A program made the position numbers and the translations under genes. Below are positions 16,304 through 44,500 of a DNA stretch of 64,000 bases, piece after piece. Each line of letters starts with the position of its first letter. The stretch's first letter is position 1. The notes beneath the pieces were generated by a model, which was not told the origin of the DNA, ran no database searches, and saw nothing but the letters and a program-made list of their open reading frames with translations. The stretch is from Callorhinchus milii (taxonomy: Eukaryota). The DNA lies in NCBI RefSeq assembly GCF_018977255.1, contig NW_024704749.1, forward strand, positions 8,990,001 to 9,054,000, in the 5' to 3' direction.

Positions 16304-16506
16304 TGTGCCATTCGTTGCTTCGCTGGTGCTGAGAATCGTTCCATTTGGATGTATTTCGCCCACGGAAAACACAGTCACTACACTTGACGGTGTATCCCGC
16401 CCAAGCGCTTCGGGACGCCTCGATGACGAGGCGCTGCAGCAAGCGTCAGGATGGCGGTGATGATGGTGGTGATGATGGTGAGAGCAGAGCAGCTGCTGAT
16501 CACAGG

Positions 16507-16588
16507 CACTTCCGGCCTCTGAGCCGGTGACGGAGGGTCGGGTCGTGACGTCAGTTCCGCAACGGCACGTGACCGGCAACATGGCGGC
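16507..16588 (+). promoter_or_regulatory. NOC4L CpG-rich proximal promoter
   Basis: ETS/GABP CACTTCCGG 16507-16515, CRE TGACGTCA 16546-16553, E-box CACGTG 16566-16571, and YY1-like AACATGGCGGC 16578-16588 overlapping the ATG. Confidence 0.7.
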
Positions 16589-19500
16589 GCCGAGTAAACT
16601 GCAGCGGCGGCTTCACGCGCTGTCGGCGTCGGTGCTCCACAACTGCCACAACTGCAACTCGGTGCTGGACATCCTGTGGCCTCTGAGGGTACCTGTCCCC
16701 CCCCCACCCCCGGGCCTCCCCGCCCACACCCCCCCCACCCCGGGCCTCCCCCCCCACCCCCACTCCCCCCCCCCCCACCCGGGCCTCCCCCCCACACCCC
16801 CCCACCCCGGGCCTCCCCCCCCCCACCCCGGGCCTCCCCCCCCACCCCACCCCCTCCCCCCCCCCACCCCGGGCCTGTCTCCCCCTCCCCCCCACACCCC
16901 CCCACCCCGGGCCTCCCCCCCCCACCCCGGGCCTGTCTCCCCCTCCCCCCCACTCCCCCCCCCCACCCCCGGGCCTCCCCCCCACACCCCCCCCACCCCG
17001 GGCCTCCCCACCCCCCACCCACCCCGGGCTCCACCCCCCCCAACCCCCCAGGCCTCCCCCCCACCTCAGGCCTGTCTCCCCCTCCCCCCCACACCCCCCC
17101 ACCCCGGGCCTCCCCACCCCCCCCCACCCCGGGCCTCCACCCCCCAACCCCCCAGGCCTCCCCCCACCTCAGGCCTGTCTCCCCTCCCCCCCACTCCCCC
17201 CCCCCCGGGCCTCCCCCCCACCCCACCCCCACTCCCCCCCCCCCCCCACCCACCCCGGGCCTCCCCCCCCCCCACCCCCGGGCCTCCCCCCCCACCCCCC
17301 ACCCCACTCCCCCCCCCCACCCCGGGCCTGTTCCCCCTCCCCCCACCCCCACCCCCACCCCGGGCCTCCCCCTCCCACCCCCACCCCCCCCACCCCCCGC
17401 CTGTCTCCCCCACTCCGCCTTTCTCATCTCTCCTCCCCACCCCCCGGCATGTCTTTCCTCTCCCCTCCCCCACCTGTGTCTCCCCCGTGCCCCCTCCTCC
17501 TGTATCTCCCCCCCCGCTGTGTCTCCCCCCCCTCCTCCTGTATCTCCCCCCCCCGCCTGTGTCTCCCCCCCCCCTCCTCCTGTATCTCCCCCCCCCCGCC
17601 TGTGTCTCCCCCCCCCCCTCCTCCTGTATCTCCCCCCCCCGCCTGTGTCTCCCCCCCCCCTCCTCCTGTATCTCCCCCCCCCGCCTGTATCTCCCCCCCC
17701 CCCTCCTCCTGTATCTCCCCCCCCCCCGCCTGTGTCTCCCCCCCCCCCGCCTGTGTCTCCCCCCCCCCCTCCTCCTGTATCTCCCCCCCCCCTCCTGTGT
17801 CTCCCCCCGTGCCCCCCCCCCCTCCCCCCCGGCCTATCCAGTGTAGAGCGAAAATCATAACGGGGGTCTTATCTCAGCAGAAATCTTCAGATAGAAAAAG
17901 TGCAGTTGTTCTTTTTTAAAAAAACAAAAAGGCCAAAAAAACACCGGTTTAGACGACCGCAAAATGTACAGTCGCCGATCCCATTGAGGGGTGGGGGGGG
18001 GGGGGAGGGGTGTCGTGTTGTTCAAGCACTTGTGTCACCTTTTGACGTATTAATTATTGGGTTATTAAATTGTTGTCATCAATACAGTCGGTCTGGTTCA
18101 CAACCGCTCAAGTCTATGTCTTGCATTCCCGTTAGGCCGAGAAGGAAGAAGCCGTTCTTGCCGCTGCAGGAACATGTCACGGGCTGTTCTGCACCCTATT
18201 GGAACGAGGGGCACTTTTTGTCGGTCAGTTGCCCGACGAGGAAACAGCTCTGACAGGTAATGAGCGGACGGATAGCTTTGCAGTCGATTTTACGAGTGCA
18301 ACTCGTCAGAGTGGAGCAGAGGGTGACGCGCAAAGGGTGGGGAGAGCAATTGTGTGGTCTCTGAGCCAGAGACCGCGTATCTTGTTGGGCTCCTGTGCAC
18401 ATTTCCTGAAGTAGATTCCTCCCTTCAACGAAGAGCCTGTGGCTCTACCAGTAATTTGTCAGCGCAGCAAGTGTTTATCAATGTTTTATCAGCAGGTTAT
18501 TCAAATTGGTTACCGTTAACACCGACCGGGGTTGGAAGGCTTATTTTTTCTGCTTGAATTCTGCGGTGTCGAGTTAAGGCCGTGATTTATTTTTTTTGTT
18601 GATTGACATTAGCACTCCTTCGAGTGCACTTGAATGACTGTGGGTGGAATATTGCTGTTCGCAATTTGGCAGCTGCATTCGCCCACAGATACAGTCGACG
18701 CACTTCACAGAAATGTCACGAAGCACTTGGTTACAGACGAGATATCAAATGCAAAGGATTATTATCATGTCGGAGCTATATTTTCACTTGTGTTTTTTAA
18801 TGTCTCCTGAATAAGAATTNNNNNNNNNNNNNNNNNNNNNNNNNTTCTCTCCCACCATCATGTGCTATTTGGTGCAATAGTGTTAACCCTAGCTCAACTT
18901 TCGTTAGCCTCACTCTTGGCAAGGGATGAAGTGTTTGGATGCCGTCATCACACATACTATTTTGGAGGAGAGATAGTTGAATATTTGCTGATGTGTAAAT
19001 ACTAAAGGTGCAAATGCTATTTCAGAGAATATCCAAACTTCTATAAAAAGCTCTACAGCTTGCTGAACCCATGTGTGTTCCACGTGAAGTACAGAGCAAG
19101 ATTCTTCCATCTAGCGGGTCTGTTTTTATCTTCCAGGTTAGTATTTCTTCATTTTATTTCCATCATTAACTGTAACAGCAGGTCTGATATTCATAAAGTA
19201 CAATATTCCAAATACACAAGTGGATAACGCTTGCTTTACAGAAAAGTACAATCATATGATAAAGTTTACCAACTAAGCAACAGTATTTCTTTTGCAATAC
19301 TAATTTCTGATACATCGCATCCTGCAATAATTTACTCACATACGTAGCGTTAGACTCGCCATTCAGTGGTGCAATGCTTACAAATACTGTAACAATAAGA
19401 TCCATTGATAATCTCTAGGATGCACTGACCTGTGGCTAAGCACCTTGGAGGCAGAGTTGGGTTCATAGAGTCTCTTTGCTGGCTTAAGACGCTGTGGCTG

Positions 19501-30894: not shown

Positions 30895-31857
30895 ATGTTA
30901 ACTACTCCAGCCTCCTACGAAAATTATTCAGACTATCTGTTGGAGATGGACGATGATTCGATTGCTGTCCTGCCGCTCGTGATTTACTCTGTGACCTTTT
31001 TGGTCGGAATCTCTGGAAACGCTCTGGTCATCTGGATCGCAACGCAGGAAGTAAGAAAGACAATCACCATGATATGGCTTTTGAATCTGTCAGTGGCTGA
31101 CTTCATGTTCACCGCCCTCTTGCCTTTTTCCATTGTGTATCAAGTAGAAAAGTTCCATTGGCCGTTTGGAAGTTTTATGTGCAAATTCATTAGTTTCGGC
31201 GTCCATCTGAACATGTTCACAAGTGTGTTCATACTGACCGTAACCAGCATTGATAGATGCCTTTCTGTTGTATTTCCAGTTTGGTGTCAGAATAATCGAA
31301 GTGTAAATTCGGCAATTATCGTGTCATTAGTTGTGTGGGTACTGGCTGCTGTAGTAAGCGTTCCTTTCTACCTTATCCGTGACACAGAAGAGGACCTGAT
31401 AATGGGGACGACGTATTGCCTTTACAAACAGGATCTGCTTAACCTCCGTAGCTTAATACTGGCAAGATTTACGTTGGGTTTCGCTCTTCCTTTTATTACA
31501 ATTGCCATTTGCTACACTGTCATCACCTTAAAGATCAAACGTAGGTGGAGAAGGGTGTCAACCAAACAGTGCAAAATAATCACTATGATCATCTTAGCTT
31601 TTCTATTTTGTTGGATACCATTTCATATTTTGAGTATAATCCACATGTTATCAGACGTTGACATTAAAACCTGGCTGCCGCTGGCTACCAGCTTTGCATA
31701 TGTTTATAGCTGCATCAATCCGATTCTCTACCTTTTCGCTGGTAATGGATTTGTGCTTCAATTCAAGAAAAGAATCCAAGCAGCACTGAGGGCAATACAC
31801 GATGAAATGAGCCACAGTAGTTCCAGGTCTGAGTCCAGGGGGGGTCAAGGGATCTGA
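30895..31857 (+). CDS. Intronless class A GPCR of the chemoattractant receptor family (chemerin receptor CMKLR1-like; relatives GPR1, C3AR1, FPRs), 320 aa
   Basis: Seven hydrophobic segments. Motifs GNALVIW, WLLNLSVADF, HWPFGSFMCK, LNMFTSVFILTVTSIDRCLSVVFPVWCQNNR, RFTLGFALPF, CWIPFH, SCINPILY. Acidic, Tyr-rich N-terminus with an NYS sequon. Exact orthology cannot be assigned by eye. Confidence 0.92.
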   Translation: MLTTPASYENYSDYLLEMDDDSIAVLPLVIYSVTFLVGISGNALVIWIATQEVRKTITMIWLLNLSVADFMFTALLPFSIVYQVEKFHWPFGSFMCKFISFGVHLNMFTSVFILTVTSIDRCLSVVFPVWCQNNRSVNSAIIVSLVVWVLAAVVSVPFYLIRDTEEDLIMGTTYCLYKQDLLNLRSLILARFTLGFALPFITIAICYTVITLKIKRRWRRVSTKQCKIITMIILAFLFCWIPFHILSIIHMLSDVDIKTWLPLATSFAYVYSCINPILYLFAGNGFVLQFKKRIQAALRAIHDEMSHSSSRSESRGGQGI

Positions 31858-37005: not shown

Positions 37006-38837
37006 GATGGTGCCGTTAGAATTCAAAACTTTATTTTTCTGCAACGGTTTGTACAAACCTTCTTAAATGCTCCGTGCCTTCAATACAACGTGTGCTGGGT
37101 ATTTCTTTGCCTCTGTCCTGTATGCACCCCCCCCCCCGCCCTTTCTCTGTCTCTCTCACACTCGCTCGCTCCCTCCCTCCCTCAAGCACAGTATAATTTC
37201 ACTCTTTGCATGGAGCTTCCCTGCCATCCTGTGGCCAACCTGTGGTAATGTGACCGGATAAAACGTACATCTGCATCGGTCCCTCTGGTGGAAATGGGTA
37301 TTTTTGTCAATATAAAACGTGATCATGAGAATAATCCTTGCATTTGATCGTCCAACTGAACAGCCGGTTTCACGTGAGGTCCCGTAGCCAGATGAGGACC
37401 TGGGTTCGATTCCCGGGCACAGGGCGAAATGTTAGGCGAGTTTCCTTCCTCCGCCTGCCTCTGTTTACCGAGCAGTGAGTAGGAGCACGGTTGTTGGTCG
37501 AAATGGTGCATCACTTTTACAGGGCTAATAATCCCATCAACAAATAGACATCTTTCTGATGTGATAAAGTGTTATGCTAAATGCAAGGTTTATTAATATT
37601 ATTAGAGGGGCCGAGACTAACAGAGAGAGAGGGAGTAAAGAGAGAGACAGAAACTGGGGGCGAAAGCGAGCCTGATAGAGAGAGAGTGAGAAATAAAACT
37701 AAACAGATTGATGCTGCTTGTACTAATGCCTAATAATAACGTACTAACGGCTTTTGGCTATTTTTACCCATTCACACTACACCCCCCCCCGCCCCCCACC
37801 CCTCGGTCCCACAGTTCAGGGGCAAAGCTCTGATTGCCCAATGCCTTGGGACGTACTCCTCATTTGAAAGACGCCGTACAAATGTCAGTTTGTATTGTGC
37901 TTGTGTTACCCTCTGAACAAAGAAAAATGTTTTGCTATCTGCCCTTAATTAAACTCTACAACACTAAATCTAGAATCTCTTGTTTTATTGTCTTGGCGGA
38001 TCCTGAATTATTGATCTACGTTTACTCTCTCAATTGCAAAAATGTCTTGTCTCATCTCCCTAAGTACCTTGGGCTATAGTTTATCTTGGATTTCGCAGCA
38101 GTTTGGCAGGGAGAGTGCTTCGAGATGTTTCAACAGCGTGATAAAATGTCCTATCAAATGCACCGATTATCATTATTCTAAATATACCCTCTCCCACACC
38201 GTTCAATTAAATCCGCCTGTAACTCACTCCTCGCACTTGTTATTTCAATGTTATTCTGCATCACTATATCCTCGATTAGATCAACCTGTGCCTCAACTTC
38301 CATTATTCTGGGTATGCCTTTACCCCAACCTATGGGATAGGTTCCACACTCACTCCTTTCACCGCACTGGAACAGTTTTAAAGTGAAATGCTCATCTGGT
38401 GACCTTGTCCGGTTATTCTCCAGAGTTGCCGTTGCCTGTTTGTAGTTCGCTTGTTAACTAGAGTGTTCGGGCCGGTTTCTACTGCTGACGTGTTCCTGCC
38501 TTTGCGATGACTAAACATTTACCTGACCCTGAGAGAGAATTGTGGCAGGACACCTGTACAAGGGGACAACCCAATGCGGGTTACAGGTAACCCCAGGTAC
38601 CGTGGACACATTCTGGGTGCCTCTGGGGTGCAGTGTGTCCTGAACCGCCCCACCTGATCCACTAAACGACCTAATTCTAGGTATTTTGCCCGCTTCGGTT
38701 ACTGCAGACACTGAGGTGAGCACCTGATACCGATGAGCCCTGGTCTGACCCGGCTCCCCCCGCAGCGGTGGTCTGGTCGGGGCTGGTTATAAGGTAACCC
38801 TCGCTCGTGCTCGCGAGTATGTTGGGGTGGTGAAGAG

Positions 38838-41415
38838 ATGGCTTTGGTGCTGTGGTGCCTGGCGCTGATCCACTGCGGGATCGCAGGACAGAATGCGACT
38901 GAGGAGCAAACCCAGATAGCTCGCGGAAAACTAATCGTGAGTATATTGTGAAGTGAATTGGTCGGATATTTGTGGGCGAAACGCAGCAGCCGATTGCACA
39001 CCACAGTGTCTCACAAACAGCCGTGGATTGTATCTGTCTCACAAGTGTGAGTGTGAGACAGGTACAGTTAGAGACGATGATCTGGGATGAGATTACTGAG
39101 CACTTGGGCCAAACATAAATTAGCACAGATTTGTATAAGACAGATTGTGTTGAAGCAGCCTTCTGGAATTCTTTAAAATTCTTTCAACCGGGTTAAACCG
39201 AGGTCTGTCTATGTAAAAAAAAATTACTGCTGCTTGTCCAGCAGAACGACAATTATTATTATGCGTAACTGAAATAAGATTGACTCGCCTCTGGGTTCCT
39301 GCGCTATTTATACTTTGTTTTAATCGATCCCCCAGTGCCTTCGCCGCTTTCTCCCTTTCCTCCTTCAAGGCCGGTCTCAAGACCTTTCTCTTTGACCGAG
39401 CCTTCAGCTCCCCTCTCGACTCTCTACCCCCTCCTCGCTCCCTCCCTTCCCTGCCCTCACCCTGACCATTTGCCCCCTGCTCGGGTCCCGACCCAACTGT
39501 ACAGCGCCTTGGGACGTCCTCCCTTGTTGTTGTTGTTGTTGTTTGAACAGGGTGTGGCAGTTGCTCCAGCCTCCACTCTTCTGACTTTTCCACATCTCTC
39601 TGATTTCTCCCCTTGGCTATAAACCATGGGAGTCTCTGTCTCAGGCTCTGAAGGTCTCGCTCATGCTGTTTTTCAGGCTCCAAGTTTGGTCGGATGACCG
39701 ATCAAGAAGCAGCCGGAGCTGTACCAATTCCTAATGGAACGCCTGGCGCTATAGTATCCTCCCTGTGACTGAGCAGCTGGGACACACAGCCCGTGACGGG
39801 GGGGGCGGAGGTGGGTGACACAGTGTATGGTTGGTGCCCGATATGGGGTGGCATAAAGAATGAGGGCACGGGGTGTGGGGATCAGAAGGTGTGGGGGTGA
39901 GGGGACACAGTGTACGCCACTCTGTAAGGAAACCCAATCTGGGGACTCCAACCCCACGTGAAGGACGCTATATAAATGCAAGTTGTTGTTGTTGTTGTTG
40001 ATTGCTGTGCGCTTAAACTCCGTGAGGAAGCTGAGGACCGCCCGAAATGTCCAATACATGTGACCACTTTCGAGCGCACACTGGGCCCTGTGTGCGGGGG
40101 CTGTTTAGAGCCAACCCCGATCCTCACACCAAACACAACCCCAAAAATTAACTCCCAAATCCTAAAGGCACTAATAACATCTGAACTCGAAAAATAACCT
40201 AAATGTTATCCCAACCCCTAATATGGCCCTAATATCAGTACCAAACCCTAAACACAACATTAATATCAGCACAAACCCTAAACACTGTACTAACATCAAG
40301 TCCTTGTCTGCTCAGAGCCAACCTTCCCCTCGGCTGTGAGCAGTTACCCCTCTCCCTGGGCTATCTATCTATTTGCTTAACTTCACCTTCAGCCACAACA
40401 TGGAGTATGAGTCCCGGGAAGACGAGGAGCCACGGTTTGTTTTCTACAATGTGGAGCAGGAGGTGGTGAAGGTCAGTGTCCAGTCACATCAACAGCACAA
40501 CTGCCACCACACGTCCTGAGCAGCTCAGCCACCAGCTCCAGCAAGCAATNNNNNNNNNNNNNNNNNNNNNNNNNNNNNNNNNNNNNNNNNNNNNNNNNNN
40601 NNNNNNNNNNNNNNNNNNNNNNNNNNNNNNNNNNNNNNNNNNNNNNNNNNNNNNNNNNNNNNNNNNNNNNNNNNNNNNAAATACGAATGCGTGTGTGTAA
40701 ATATGTGCGTAAATGAGTGTAAATGTGTGTGTGTGTGTGTGTATAACTATGTTTTTAAATACACGTGTGTGTGTGTGTGTAAATGGGTATGGGGTTAAAT
40801 ACAGTTTACATTTATACAATGCCTTTTGTGTTGAGAGGAAATCTCAAAGGCTTCCCAGTGTTGTTGTTGGCCGAGGACCTGAGCTGGAGGACAAAAGCCA
40901 AAGGGGGCAGCGAGGGGATAGGTAATCGCGGTAAATGTGTGCGTCGGTGAGTCTATGTGTGTCTTTGTCTGTGTGTGTGCGTGTGTGTGTATTTATGTGA
41001 CTATGCGCGCGTGTGTGTGTGTCGAACTCATCCACCCCCATCTGTTGTTTAAGAGGCACCTCCTTCCCCGTCCCTTATTTCGCCCACAAATACACAGTCG
41101 CTACACTTTACGGTAGAGCCCGCGGAGCGCTTTGAGACGTCTCGAAGACCCGATAAGGCGCGGTATCAAATGCGAGGATTATTATTATTATGATTATTAT
41201 GATTATTAAGCAGTGATTTGCTGTGTGGTGTGTGTGTGTGTGTAAGAAACAAGTCCACCTTCCTCTCACAGGAAGAGCTGGTGCAGGGAATGAAGTTGGA
41301 AGAGATGTCTGCTCTGCTCGAGTCGCTGGGATTCTACAGGAAATCAGCCAAGGGCGAGGAGGTTCCTGAAGAATTCCGGCATTTCCCACTCCGAGCTGCT
41401 CGGGATGAGCTGTAG
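38838..41415 (+). CDS. SELENOE: Selenoprotein E / Fep15 (SELENOM/Sep15 family), 132 aa, Sec at residue 40
   Basis: Exons 38838-38936, 39677-39753, 40393-40471, 41272-41415 join in phase to give MALVLWCLALIHCGIAGQNATEEQTQIARGKLIAPSLVG-U-PIKKQPELYQFLMERLALYHNMEYESREDEEPRFVFYNVEQEVVKEELVQGMKLEEMSALLESLGFYRKSAKGEEVPEEFRHFPLRAARDEL*. In-frame TGA at 39695-39697, hydrophobic signal peptide, RDEL terminus, SECIS downstream. Closely resembles recalled teleost Fep15 (APSVVGU..FLMERWALYHNLEY..LGFYKRSQKGEEVPEEF..RDEL). Confidence 0.93.
39330..39543 (+). mobile_element. L2 LINE 3' fragment in SELENOE intron 1
   Basis: SLSSFKAGLKTFLFDRAFSSPLDS coding end, one 46-bp unit and (TTG)n tail. Confidence 0.85.
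39695..39697 (+). other. SELENOE: Selenocysteine codon (TGA)
   Basis: In frame within exon 2 (GTC GGA TGA CCG ATC), at the position of U in the SELENOM CGGU motif; homology continues after it. Confidence 0.9.
39754..40392 (+). other. Probable U12-type (minor spliceosome) GT-AG intron
   Basis: Donor GTATCCTC (U12 consensus GTATCCTT); branch-like TTTGCTTAAC at 40372-40381 about 12 nt before the AG; short pyrimidine tract. Confidence 0.8.
40550..40678. other. Assembly gap (129 N) in SELENOE intron 3
   Basis: Run of N. The flanking exons join in phase, so no coding exon needs to be hidden here. Confidence 0.99.
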
Positions 41416-41441
41416 CCACGGTCACCTACGGACAGAGAATG

Positions 41442-41522
41442 GCTGGCAGGAAAGCGAGGATGATGTTAGTGTCTGAAAGGCGGTGACTCCCTGGCATTGG
41501 CGGAGAAGTTGCTTCCTGCAGC
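41442..41522 (+). promoter_or_regulatory. SECIS element (form 2) in the SELENOE 3' UTR
   Basis: Helix I GCAGGAA(A)GCGA / TTGCTTCCTGC; core ATGAT 41460-41464 / GGAG 41502-41505; helix II GTTAGTGTCTG / CTGGCATTGGC; apical AAA 41476-41478 plus mini-hairpin GGCG-GTGA-CTCC. Confidence 0.9.
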
Positions 41523-41534
41523 TGAGGTTCTCGT

Positions 41535-41540
41535 AATAAA
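41535..41540 (+). terminator. SELENOE polyadenylation signal (AATAAA)
   Basis: Canonical AATAAA 12 nt after the SECIS. Confidence 0.7.
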
Positions 41541-44500
41541 TTGACTACTGCTAACATCTGTGTGCGCTGATCTTAGTTTTCTTTGGCTCTTGGTAAGTCC
41601 AAGGACACCATCACCAAACCCCCCCCGCCCCCCCACAAAACACACACACACACACGATCCTGTTTGCCTGTTCTTTTCGGGGCCCTGCCACATTCCCGCT
41701 GAGAACGGGTTTAAATGCTTTGCAGATGATTCCGACCAGCCAGGGAACGTTCAGTGTCGATTACGGTAAAATGGGAAGCACATGTGGGGAGATGATCGCT
41801 GGGACTCTTTCGTGGGGGCCAGGCACCCTTCGCTGACTTGCGTCCGTCCCTCCCTGTTTTACCTTCCCGAAACTTCTCCTGGGTGTCGAACGCCTCCACC
41901 GGGTTTCCTCTCAGCCCTCTCCGACGCTCAATGAAGATAGCTCTTTAGTGTCGAGACCCGAAGCTCTCATCCCACCCCCCCCACCCCCACCCCCGTCACT
42001 CACCCCTACTCACCCCCCAAATAACCCGCGTTCGACAATGCAGTGCTGTGCGTTATTATCACCACTCTCCACCCCCTCCTGATCCCGACCGCCAGCAGAT
42101 CTCTGACGGTCCAGCGCCCTGGGACGTGCTCCCGACGCGAAAGGCGCTATACCGATGTAATCTTGTTGTTGTTCTTGTCGTTGAACTCGAGAGATTCATT
42201 CTTCGGGCCCTTCATCATCATCATCATCATCATCATCAACATCCCGGTGCAGTAATCAGCTGAGATCCAGAGTCGAGCCACCAGAGCAATTCTCCCAACA
42301 CACCACAGGATGACACTCTTCCCCCAGCTTTAACTCATCCTTTTCTCACCAGCGCACACTCTCTCTCGCTCGCTCGCTCGCTCGCTCTCTCTCGTGGCTG
42401 CCACTCAGAAGCCAGACACATTCATCAAGCGGAGAGAGAGTGGCTGCAGTATCCACAGACACTGGGTTAAAATCAGGCTGTTGAGGAAAGACAGTTTGCT
42501 GTTTACATAGAGTTAGCCTGTTAACACATGTACCCCCCAGTGACTCCTCAAGCCTTACACCAGCAGAGTTGACGGCTATTTTTTTTCTTAACCGGGTCAT
42601 TTGTCTAAATTATGTCACAGGCAATGAGGGAAGTGCTTAAGAAGCTCAAATGAAGGGTTTAGCTTTAACTGTGACACTTGTCTATCTCATTCTTCCTCAA
42701 AATAACTGCCCACTCCCACCCCACCCTCCCCCCCCCCCCCCACTCGGACCGCTGAGAAACTCTGTATCCACCTTTAACCCCTTCAGGGGCTCAGCGTGTG
42801 AAACTCACGCACACTCACTCCCCTCACTCGCGCTCGCTCACACTCAGACTCCCTTACGCGAGATAAGGCGCTACATCAAATGCAAGGATTAATTAAATAA
42901 TTCAATAAATAAATAGGCCAAAGGGAACTTCTTCAACCAAACCCCGTCTTGTGGTCTTGCCTGTGGCTGCCCCCAGCAGGCACTGGAGCTGAGTTGCGAT
43001 CGCAGGCAAAGGCAGAGTTGTCAGTCACTACTGCAGCTTCCCGATCCGCTCAGTTACAGACGTCAGTTTCAGTGCCGTTATTGAGGGCCTAACACGAGTT
43101 GGTAAAGTGAATCGGCGAAGAAAGGCAGGAGCTGCATTGGGAGCTGCCGTGTTTCAGATGAGGCCTCCGCCCTGAGGTCTTGTGTGCCTGTTTATCAGGT
43201 GGACGTCACAGACCGTTTGAACACCGAAGATTGGACTCGTCACTGTTCAGGAGGTGGACTACAGGGAGGGTAAGGGGTAGGAGGGGTGGCCGATCGCGTG
43301 ATCGTAGAGGAGGGTCTCGAGATGTGGTTCAGGCTACAATGCTGCGGTCGTGATGTTACTCCAAGTACAATTGTCTACGTGGCAGAAATTGGACGTGAAG
43401 ACAAGACACCCGGAAGGTGTAAGAGTCGGTCCGATCTCTCTAGTCGCTCCTCTCTCACTTGGGGTCCAATCTCTTAAGTTCCTCCTCTCTGGTTCGGCGA
43501 GGTACTCAGTGGAAGGGCACGAACCGACTGGAAAGAGTCTTTGGTGTGATGTATGTAACCGCCCCGTCACTCTTGATCATTCACTCACGGTGACAAGAGT
43601 AGTCCAGGAAAACCACATTATTTGTACTATTACGAAAATGTTAATAATTTTTAAATTGTTCCTAATCTGACAAGGAAATTGGATTTATAGTAATTGTGTT
43701 TGACTTTTTCTGAGGGCGATGACAAGGTATAAAGCCTGTGTAATTATTCAATGTACATTTGAATGGCCCTGGGTGATTATCGAATCACTACACCAAAACC
43801 CTCCGAAACCTTAAAAGGGAAACACAATCTACGGGATAGCGATCAGTAAGAAAAGAAACAAGTTTTGAGCAAGTTTGACTTTTTAAAAAAAAAAAGGGCT
43901 GTTGCTTTGTTTGTTGACACTCGAACCGCGACTGTTTGCGGGGACGCTGCTGTGCGCAATTGGCCGCCATGTTTCGCCCCCACTATATATATATATATAT
44001 ATACAGGGAATTCACCTTACAGCATATTCTGCGAAGCGCTTTGGGACAGCTCGAAGACGTGATGAGGCGCTGTATCAAAGGCAAGGATTGTTATTGTTAT
44101 TATTGTATATTAACGCCAAATTATTGCTGTCAGTTGAAGTCAATTGACATCTCGCTGTGACCAAAACGTGCAAATTGTCAGCACCTGAGACAAAGAATGA
44201 GCTCAGCGGCTAATGCACAAGTCCTTACTTGTCCTGAGCAAAGTTGGAACAAATTAAAGATCTGGCCCTAATTTAACTCAGTCAATCACAGGCTCCACAA
44301 TTGTTGCTCAGGCCTCAGCAAACGGGTCCTAGAGCTCCAGCAAAAGCGAGGCTCCTTTTACACAGCAACACAACAAGAGGTGACCCACCCCACGGACATC
44401 TCTGAGACGATGGGGCTTTTCAACCAGGTTAGTAGAAATAAGTTATTTTCCCCGGTCACCAGAGAGCACAAATTTAAGGTAATTACAAAAAAAATCAAAG

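What the first reader, a model, noticed from the sequence alone, without database searches (positions are those of the whole stretch)
38838..41540. Hidden selenoprotein gene (SELENOE/Fep15) with every Sec-recoding signal present
Seen: four exons splice in phase into a 132-aa protein only if the TGA at 39695 is read as an amino acid; the product has a signal peptide, an NAT sequon and C-terminal RDEL, and a SECIS plus AATAAA follow. The ORF track shows only the last exon. Established: SELENOE/Fep15 is a SELENOM-derived ER selenoprotein of unknown function, described in teleosts, absent from mammals and, as I recall, also reported in elephant shark. Seen: the SELENOM CxxU motif is LVGU here and the predicted mature chain has no Cys, so Sec has no intramolecular resolving partner. 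Inference: an intact cartilaginous-fish copy dates the SELENOM/SELENOE split before the jawed-vertebrate radiation, and standard annotation would probably truncate or miss it. The family is known; its function is not.
Basis: partly seen in the sequence, partly recalled or inferred. Interest (0 to 1): 0.92.

Follow-up and report, generated by a model that had tools for sequence, protein, structure and literature searches.

The report
Shark selenoprotein E gene, already known
This is an intact copy of selenoprotein E (formerly Fep15), a small endoplasmic-reticulum selenoprotein, in a shark or ray genome; the gene and its presence in cartilaginous fish are already in print, so the find is correct but ordinary.

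Summary
Four + strand exons (38838-38936, 39677-39753, 40393-40471, 41272-41415) join in phase into 132 codons plus TAG, with one in-frame TGA at 39695.

- **Identity:** every exon piece matches SELENOE/Fep15-type proteins in collinear order. The best match is RefSeq 'selenoprotein e' of the shark Heterodontus francisci.
- **Sec codon:** the TGA falls where frog homologues carry Cys. Contigs of four public runs read TGA there.
- **SECIS:** a form-2 SECIS-shaped hairpin starts 44 nt after the stop. It is weak in Rfam (16.9 bits, cutoff 35). It was the only such site in 128 kb in my own structural scan.
- **N gap:** it lies in intron 3, one contig bridges it collinearly, and no protein columns are missing across it.
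- **Host:** a neighbouring receptor gene places the window in an elasmobranch.
- **Not shown:** no spliced RNA was seen, so expression is untested.
- **Novelty:** low. Fep15 was reported as a selenoprotein in elephant shark in 2012 and mapped to the gnathostome root in 2026. Its poor annotation is documented.
- **Earlier scan notes:** the SECIS and intron 2 on this window, and another hidden selenoprotein gene on another piece of this genome.

The parts
38838..38936 (+). Exon 1: start codon, hydrophobic leader (residues 1-16 or so), NAT sequon, conserved IARGKLI
   Evidence: Residues 23-33 match frog homologue P0016 residues 31-41 (7 of 11 identical).
38937..39676 (+). Intron 1 (GT-AG), with a highly repeated element at about 39306-39507 ending in a (TTG)n run
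   Evidence: Summed contig depths of about 0.9-1.1 million in the two bins covering 39306-39507, in runs X2-X4 (table 2).
39677..39753 (+). Exon 2, the Sec exon: APSLVG, then TGA, then PIKKQPELYQFLMERLAL plus two bases of a split Tyr codon
   Evidence: APSLVG aligns to frog APSVVG. The post-TGA piece is 11 of 13 identical to Heterodontus selenoprotein e.
39695..39697 (+). In-frame TGA read as selenocysteine
   Evidence: It sits in the column of the Cys in frog homologues, which in turn aligns to the Sec position (Cys in the construct) of mouse SelM 2a2p. No other letter at this place in contigs of 4 of 4 runs that span it (tables 3 and 8).
39754..40392 (+). Intron 2, with U12-type-like signals: donor GTATCCT, and TGCTTAAC ending 12 nt before the acceptor
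   Evidence: GTATCCT occurs 5 times and TGCTTAAC 4 times in the window on both strands. No RNA evidence. The consensus motifs are recalled.
40393..40471 (+). Exon 3: completes the Tyr codon, then HNMEYESREDEEPRFVFYNVEQEVVK
   Evidence: 12 of 25 identical and 21 of 25 similar to Heterodontus selenoprotein e.
40472..41271 (+). Intron 3 (GT-AG), holding the assembly gap 40550-40678 and simple repeats
   Evidence: A contig of run X3 bridges the gap collinearly (record 22). No alignment column is missing between exons 3 and 4.
41272..41415 (+). Exon 4: the conserved C-terminal part, LGFYRKSAKGEEVPEEF ... ARDEL, then stop TAG
   Evidence: 20 hits at E 0.001 or better, best 73% identical; mouse SelM at E 2.2e-4.
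41442..41522 (+). SECIS-shaped hairpin (form 2): helix I, ATGA at 41460-41463, 10-bp helix II, AAA at 41476-41478, mini-stem, GA at 41503-41504
   Evidence: Unconstrained MFE fold gives this shape, -30.8 kcal/mol, z -2.26. Rfam SECIS_1 end-to-end at 16.9 bits against a cutoff of 35, E 0.63 in 145 nt. It is the single hit of my structural scan in 128 kb.
41535..41540 (+). AATAAA poly(A) signal
   Evidence: A 280-letter contig of run X1 ends at 41550 (record 8). This is suggestive only.

Best explanation
This is the SELENOE (Fep15) orthologue of an elasmobranch: a four-exon gene for a 132-residue protein of the Sep15/SelM thioredoxin-like family.

Inferred mechanism, from family knowledge:
- The mRNA's UGA in exon 2 is recoded to selenocysteine by the SECIS hairpin in the 3' UTR, 323 nt downstream in the spliced message, through the usual SBP2/eEFSec route.
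- The hydrophobic leader sends the chain into the ER.
- The NAT sequon may be glycosylated.
- The C-terminal RDEL keeps the protein in the ER through KDEL receptors.
- The single Sec sits where SelM has the U of CxxU, but Leu replaces the Cys. The redox step therefore cannot be an internal selenenylsulfide. It must use an outside thiol (a substrate, a partner protein or glutathione), as in one-cysteine redox enzymes.

Shown here: gene structure, homology, placement of the codon, the hairpin, and the letters TGA in reads.

Inferred only: transcription, splicing, Sec insertion, ER residence and chemistry.
For: Structure and phase.

Homology, exon by exon and in collinear order:
- Exon 1 to frog P0016 31-41.
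- The piece before the TGA to frog APSVVG.
- The piece after the TGA to Heterodontus P0001 2-14, 85% identical.
- Exon 3 to P0001 16-40.
- Exon 4 to P0001 44-88, 73% identical, 63.8 bits.

Family identity:
- All 20 hits of exon 4 at E 0.001 or better, among 1.84 billion representatives, carry the family's C-terminal motif at the aligned place: PRDEL in 18, PKDEL in 1, PRDEF in 1.
- Mouse SelM scores only 24.9 bits.
- RefSeq names the two closest shark proteins 'selenoprotein e'.
- All 23 of 23 nearly invariant family columns covered by exons 3-4 are kept.

Sec codon:
- The TGA sits in the frog Cys column, which aligns to the redox residue of SelM.
- Contigs from 4 of 4 runs, from 2 studies, read TGA.

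SECIS shape and uniqueness.

Host: the 12 best named hits of the neighbouring receptor are all elasmobranchs, at 50-63% identity.

[quoted passage not shown] SELENOE was found as a selenoprotein only in fishes and arose at the root of Gnathostomata.
Against: - No RNA evidence. None of the 5 holders is on record as RNA.
- The 15 joints shown are all repeat-related and none is an exon junction. 57 further joints were not shown.
- Rfam's SECIS_1 score is under half its gathering score. It appears only when 145 nt are searched, not in 4.5 kb at E up to 1.
- My structural scan's thresholds were set after seeing the candidate.
- Pfam found nothing on the separate exon pieces. The joined protein was not searched, by rule.
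- No orthologous DNA could be fetched, so there is no covariation or dN/dS test.
- Of the 10 of the 20 exon-4 hits whose names I looked up, 6 carry 'selenoprotein M', 'M-like' or 'SELM' in at least one source. The SELENOE label therefore rests on RefSeq's shark names, the frog Cys form described in the papers, and the missing Cys of the motif.
- No tree with curated Fep15, SELENOM and SELENOF sequences was built.
Confidence: 0.93

Rival explanations
1. It is a SELENOM gene or a lineage-specific SELENOM paralogue, not SELENOE.
For: Exon 4 matches mouse SelM 2a2p (E 2.2e-4). The family profile matches SelM at E 1.1e-14. Of the 10 relatives whose names I looked up, 6 are labelled 'selenoprotein M', 'M-like' or 'SELM' in at least one source.
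Against: SelM scores 24.9 bits, against 47-64 bits for the PRDEL-type proteins. The Cys of SelM's CxxU is Leu here and Val in frogs. The closest proteins are RefSeq 'selenoprotein e'. The frog Cys form matches what the papers describe for Fep15/SELENOE.
Confidence: 0.04
2. It is a decaying or silent copy: the TGA is a true stop and the rest is a relic.
For: No transcript evidence was obtained. The Rfam SECIS score is below threshold.
Against: All four exons are open with standard splice signals. All 23 of 23 nearly invariant columns downstream of the TGA are kept. The TGA is exactly at the Sec/Cys column. A SECIS-shaped hairpin and AATAAA follow at the expected places.
Confidence: 0.03
3. The TGA is an assembly or sequencing error for a Cys codon, so this would be a Cys form as in frogs.
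For: Cys forms of this family exist in frogs.
Against: Contigs of 4 of 4 runs that span the place show no other letter at 39695-39697. One of these runs may be the assembly's own source. A SECIS-shaped element is present.
Confidence: 0.01

Closest known systems
Selenoprotein E (SELENOE, formerly Fep15) of sharks, e.g. RefSeq XP_067911661.1 of Heterodontus francisci and the Chiloscyllium plagiosum entry
   Same: Collinear match over exons 2b, 3 and 4: 85%, 48% and 73% identity. The C-terminal xRDEL is shared. The Pfam Sep15_SelM domain is found on the homologues. In Heterodontus, the homologue of this window's neighbouring receptor gene lies on a contig of the same length (83,741,193) as its selenoprotein e gene.
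   Different: The database entries are 88-aa forms that start after the Sec. The window shows the full gene. The window copy is more diverged from the two galeomorph sharks than they are from each other (73% against 92%). It ends ARDEL, not PRDEL.
Frog Cys homologues of SELENOE (labelled 'selenoprotein M-like', e.g. Spea bombifrons, Leptodactylus fuscus)
   Same: Same length class (138-144 aa), the same leader, an N-x-S/T sequon at residues 17-24 in 11 of 13, IARG..APSVVG, HN.EY, GFY, PRDEL. The only Cys beyond the leader is at the redox column in 13 of 13.
   Different: Cys instead of Sec at the redox column. No SECIS would be needed there (not checked, as no DNA was available).
Selenoprotein M (mouse, PDB 2a2p)
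   Same: Thioredoxin-like Sep15/SelM domain. The family profile aligns over positions 33-135 at E 1.1e-14. The Sec position is shared. The GFYRKSA motif is shared.
   Different: SelM has CxxU. Here the Cys is Leu. The score is much lower than to SELENOE-type proteins (24.9 against 47-64 bits).
Selenoprotein F (Sep15)
   Same: The papers place Fep15/SELENOE in one homologous family with SELENOF, with partly shared intron positions.
   Different: No Sep15 chain of the PDB matched the family profile at E up to 10. That SELENOF has a CxU motif and a UGGT-binding domain comes from an abstract listing and from recall.

Membership tests
SELENOE / Fep15 | Closest sequence relatives are SELENOE proteins | tested here: met
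   Exon 4: 20 of 20 hits at E 0.001 or better are PRDEL-type proteins, and the best is RefSeq 'selenoprotein e'. Exons 1, 2b and 3 match the same proteins collinearly. No tree with curated references was built.
SELENOE / Fep15 | In-frame UGA at the family's redox position | tested here: met
   TGA 39695 sits in the column of the frog Cys, which aligns to the redox residue of SelM. The letters are confirmed in 4 of 4 runs.
SELENOE / Fep15 | Sec alone in the redox motif, with no partner Cys (hallmark recalled from the abstract of Novoselov 2006, which could not be opened here) | tested here: met
   The motif is LVG-TGA. There is no Cys in exons 2-4. The same holds in 13 of 13 frog homologues.
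SELENOE / Fep15 | SECIS element in the 3' UTR | tested here: met
   The shape is met: ATGA / 10-bp helix / AAA / GA / helix I. It is the only such site in 128 kb. Caveat: Rfam SECIS_1 scores 16.9 bits against a cutoff of 35. No SECISearch3 run and no orthologue covariation.
SELENOE / Fep15 | ER targeting: N-terminal signal peptide and ER residence | tested here: inconclusive
   A hydrophobic leader and a C-terminal RDEL are present. No signal-peptide predictor or localisation test was available.
SELENOE / Fep15 | Sec is actually inserted (75Se labelling, dependence on SECIS and SBP2) | not testable with these tools
   No experiment was possible. No RNA run was found.
Sep15/SelM redox domain (Pfam PF08806) | Significant match to the domain model | tested here: inconclusive
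   The separate exon pieces gave 0 relevant families. The joined protein was not searched, by rule. Homologues P0001, P0024 and P0037 pass the cutoff, and P0016 falls just below it (24.7 against 26 bits).
SELENOM | CxxU redox motif | tested here: not met
   Leu stands at the position of the Cys.
U12-type (minor spliceosome) intron, for intron 2 | Donor /GTATCCT, and a TCCTTAAC-like branch site about 10-15 nt before the acceptor (consensus recalled) | tested here: met
   GTATCCT is at 39754 and TGCTTAAC at 40374-40381, ending 12 nt before the exon. There is no RNA or orthologue support.

The most novel reading that the evidence does not exclude
Intron 2, directly after the Sec exon, is a genuine minor-spliceosome (U12-type) intron that is conserved across SELENOE genes. 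Its slow removal would gate how much Sec-decoding mRNA is made, coupling minor splicing to expression of this ER selenoprotein. My two literature searches (listings only) showed no paper linking U12 or minor introns to the Sep15/SelM/SELENOE family.
Probability: 0.08. Interest if true: 0.45.

Novelty: already known. Interest (0 to 1): 0.15.

Why it matters
It matters little for biology. The gene family, its Sec-only motif, its presence in cartilaginous fish and its origin near the root of jawed vertebrates are all published.

It has some practical value as an annotation fix:
- No protein from this window's SELENOE turned up in the protein collections, although the neighbouring receptor's did.
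- The shark entries that do exist are truncated or mis-spliced.
- This is the kind of error quantified in PMC12822975.

The function of SELENOE is still unknown, but this copy adds no new handle on it.

Tried and rejected
Searches that led nowhere:
- Rfam over 38000-42500 at E up to 1 found no SECIS, only a chance snoRNA-like hit. The SECIS_1 match appeared only in a 145-nt search and is sub-threshold.
- Pfam on exon pieces 1, 3 and 4 gave nothing relevant.
- The search for homologous proteins on the exon 4 part of the 65-aa ORF found no candidate. This blank reflects the word index and length window, not absence.
- A bacterial promoter/terminator scan was irrelevant to a vertebrate gene. I discard it.

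RNA evidence:
- The one run search listed no RNA holder.
- The one read-laying run showed genomic contigs only, with no exon junctions among the joints shown.
- Contig record 8 of run X1 spans 41271-41550, from one base before exon 4 to 10 nt past AATAAA. This is tempting as a last-exon transcript piece. I do not count it, because contigs cannot show RNA ends and the run also covers intron 1.

A tree against SELENOM and SELENOF was not built. No reference sequences of those families were available as tool outputs.

The original Fep15 paper (Novoselov 2006) is not held. What I say of it is recalled from its abstract.

Supplementary Table T3 of PMC13134290, the list of the nine cartilaginous fish genomes, could not be seen. 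It would tell whether this very species was already analysed.

Rejected readings: SELENOM, pseudogene, and an assembly error at the TGA (see rival explanations).
Full report
**What is there.** On the + strand, four exons with standard boundaries join in phase.
- Exon 1 is 38838-38936 (ATG; donor GTGAGT).
- Exon 2 is 39677-39753 (acceptor tttttcag; donor GTATCC).
- Exon 3 is 40393-40471 (acceptor ccttcag; donor GTCAGT).
- Exon 4 is 41272-41415 (acceptor ctcacag; stop TAG).
- The lengths are 99, 77, 79 and 144 nt. That gives 399 nt, or 132 codons plus the stop, with one split Tyr codon (TA|C) between exons 2 and 3.
- The only internal stop is TGA at 39695-39697.
- The N-terminus is strongly hydrophobic over residues 1-8 or so. 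A NAT sequon follows at residues 19-21. The chain ends ARDEL.
- The only Cys are residues 7 and 13, in the leader.

**The assembly gap.** The run of N at 40550-40678 lies inside intron 3. Two tests say it does not touch the coding model.
- One 1112-letter contig of run X3 lies on 39993-40548 and on 40794-41148, same strand and collinear. It has 199 of its own letters between them, against 245 window places (table 8, record 22). The two sides are therefore continuous, and the gap is probably shorter than written.
- In an alignment with 17 homologues, exon 3 (26 residues) and exon 4 (47 residues) fill the family's columns without a missing one.

**What it is.**
- Exon 4 (47 aa), scored against 1.84 billion representative proteins, gave 20 hits at E 0.001 or better and 8 at 1e-10 or better.
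- All 20 carry the same C-terminal motif at the aligned place: PRDEL in 18, PKDEL in 1 and PRDEF in 1.
- The best hit (73% identity, 63.8 bits) is RefSeq XP_067911661.1, 'selenoprotein e' of the horn shark Heterodontus francisci.
- A second search from that protein found 'selenoprotein e' of Chiloscyllium plagiosum, a C. punctatum entry, a sturgeon entry and a series of frog 'selenoprotein M-like' proteins of 138-144 aa.
- The other pieces match the same proteins in order. Exon 1 residues 23-33 match frog P0016 31-41. APSLVG matches frog APSVVG. The post-TGA piece matches P0001 2-14 at 11 of 13 identical. Exon 3 matches P0001 16-40. The post-TGA piece gave no BLASTP alignment to frog P0016.
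- All 23 of 23 nearly invariant family columns that exons 3-4 cover are kept.
- The separate pieces do not reach Pfam. Homologues P0001, P0024 and P0037 pass the Sep15_SelM cutoff, and P0016 falls just under it.

**The TGA.**
- It sits exactly where the frog proteins have Cys (APSVVG-C).
- A profile of the family aligns that Cys to the redox residue of mouse SelM (PDB 2a2p, E 1.1e-14). SelM's first Cys of CxxU falls on Val in frogs and Leu here.
- Contigs of four public runs from two studies span the codon and show no other letter (tables 3 and 8). One of them may be the assembly's own source.
- An assembly error for a Cys codon is thus unlikely.

**The SECIS.**
- Forty-four nt after the stop, ATGA (41460) opens a 10-bp helix. 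AAA follows 12 nt after the ATGA, then a mini-stem, then GA (41503) directly after the helix's 3' strand. A long lower helix closes the element.
- The unconstrained fold of 41442-41522 gives this shape (-30.8 kcal/mol, z -2.26, 8 of 200 shuffles as good). The 130-nt fold gives it too.
- Rfam's SECIS_1 aligns end to end but scores 16.9 bits against a cutoff of 35. It appears only in a 145-nt search, not in 4.5 kb at E up to 1.
- As a control I wrote a simple structural pattern: ATGA, at least 9 of 10 pairs stacked on the core, AA 10-13 nt on, GA, and a lower helix of 4 or more pairs. It hit 1 site in the whole window on both strands, out of 480 ATGA, and that site is this one. It hit 0 sites in each of 20 shuffled windows. 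With 8 of 10 pairs there are 3 sites.
- The thresholds were chosen after seeing the candidate, so this is support and not a clean test.
- AATAAA follows at 41535.
- The UGA-to-SECIS distance in the spliced message is 323 nt.

**Host.**
- A single-exon receptor gene at 30895-31857 (+) resembles chemerin, C5a and C3a receptors.
- Its 12 best named relatives are all sharks or rays, at 50-63% identity, with Heptranchias perlo best. The next hit is a teleost at 42%.
- The window is therefore elasmobranch.
- In Heterodontus, the receptor homologue and selenoprotein e are both on a contig of 83,741,193 bases. This hints at conserved linkage.

**Expression.**
- It was not shown. None of the 5 holders is on record as RNA.
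- Runs X2-X4 cover the introns and are genomic.
- None of the 15 joints shown is an exon junction, and 57 were not shown.
- A 280-letter contig of run X1 spans 41271-41550, close to the limits of exon 4 plus the 3' UTR. I do not count it.

**Comparison with what is known.**
- Mariotti et al. [quoted passage not shown] They place it in the ancestral vertebrate selenoproteome.
- The 2026 BMC Genomics study (PMC13134290, passages read) analysed nine cartilaginous fish. It found SELENOE as a selenoprotein only in fishes and maps its origin to the root of Gnathostomata. It calls the protein functionally uncharacterised and distantly related to SELENOF.
- The 2026 PLoS Comput Biol paper (PMC12822975, passages read) reports that SELENOE is among the worst annotated families in Ensembl, with under 1% well annotated.
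- What I saw agrees. The two RefSeq shark entries are 88-aa forms that begin after the Sec, and the C. punctatum entry skips the Sec segment.
- The lack of a partner Cys is a family trait. In 13 of 13 frog homologues the only Cys past the leader is at the redox column.
- That Fep15 'has only Sec' and enters the ER through its signal peptide is recalled from the abstract of Novoselov 2006, which is not held.
- Whether SELENOE is nearer to SELENOM or to SELENOF is open. My profile hit SelM and no Sep15 chain, while the papers group it with SELENOF.

**Verdict.** The thing is a known gene in a clade where it is already reported, so novelty is 'already known' and interest is low.
- The side feature worth a look is intron 2. 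Its donor GTATCCT, and a TGCTTAAC ending 12 nt before the acceptor, look like a U12-type intron. Another note of this scan already flags it.
- The scan also noted the SECIS on this window and a different hidden selenoprotein gene on another piece of this genome.

Noticed in passing
window 39754-40392: Intron 2 has U12-type-like signals: donor GTATCCT, and TGCTTAAC at 40374-40381 ending 12 nt before the acceptor, with a weak pyrimidine tract. GTATCCT occurs 5 times and TGCTTAAC 4 times in the window on both strands. Two paper searches (listings only) showed nothing linking minor introns to this family.
   Followed up: partly
window 30895-31857 (+): An intact single-exon 320-aa GPCR of the chemerin/C5a/C3a/formyl-peptide receptor group. 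The window's own protein is in the collection. The 12 best named relatives are all elasmobranchs. The Heterodontus homologue lies on a contig of the same length as its selenoprotein e gene.
   Followed up: partly
window 38902-39002, 39306-39507, 39912-40012, 41124-41224: Intronic stretches with summed contig depths of thousands to a million (table 2), some of them next to (TTG)n or (ATT)n runs. These look like high-copy interspersed repeats, probably SINE or LINE tails. The many 'joints' connect such repeats and are not splicing.
   Followed up: no
window 40548-40794: A contig of run X3 has 199 letters where the window has 245 places, including the 129 N (record 22). The gap is probably shorter than written. 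No gap letters were read.
   Followed up: partly
window 41271-41550: A 280-letter contig of run X1 (kind guessed as RNA) begins one base before exon 4 and ends 10 nt after AATAAA (record 8). This could be a trace of the mature 3' exon, or coincidence.
   Followed up: no
window 38819-38833: A four-codon upstream ORF (ATG TTG GGG TGG TGA) lies just before the start codon.
   Followed up: no
window 16378-17919: A G+C-rich low-complexity stretch gives long Pro-rich and Gly-rich ORFs on both strands, up to 439 aa. It is most likely simple repeat and not coding.
   Followed up: no
window 39797, 39887, 41067, 41071: Intronic differences between runs: a GGGGGT insertion in X2, A>G in X2-X4, C>T in X3-X4, and a C insertion in X2-X4 (tables 3-4). 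These are probably ordinary polymorphisms. None lies in an exon or in the SECIS.
   Followed up: no
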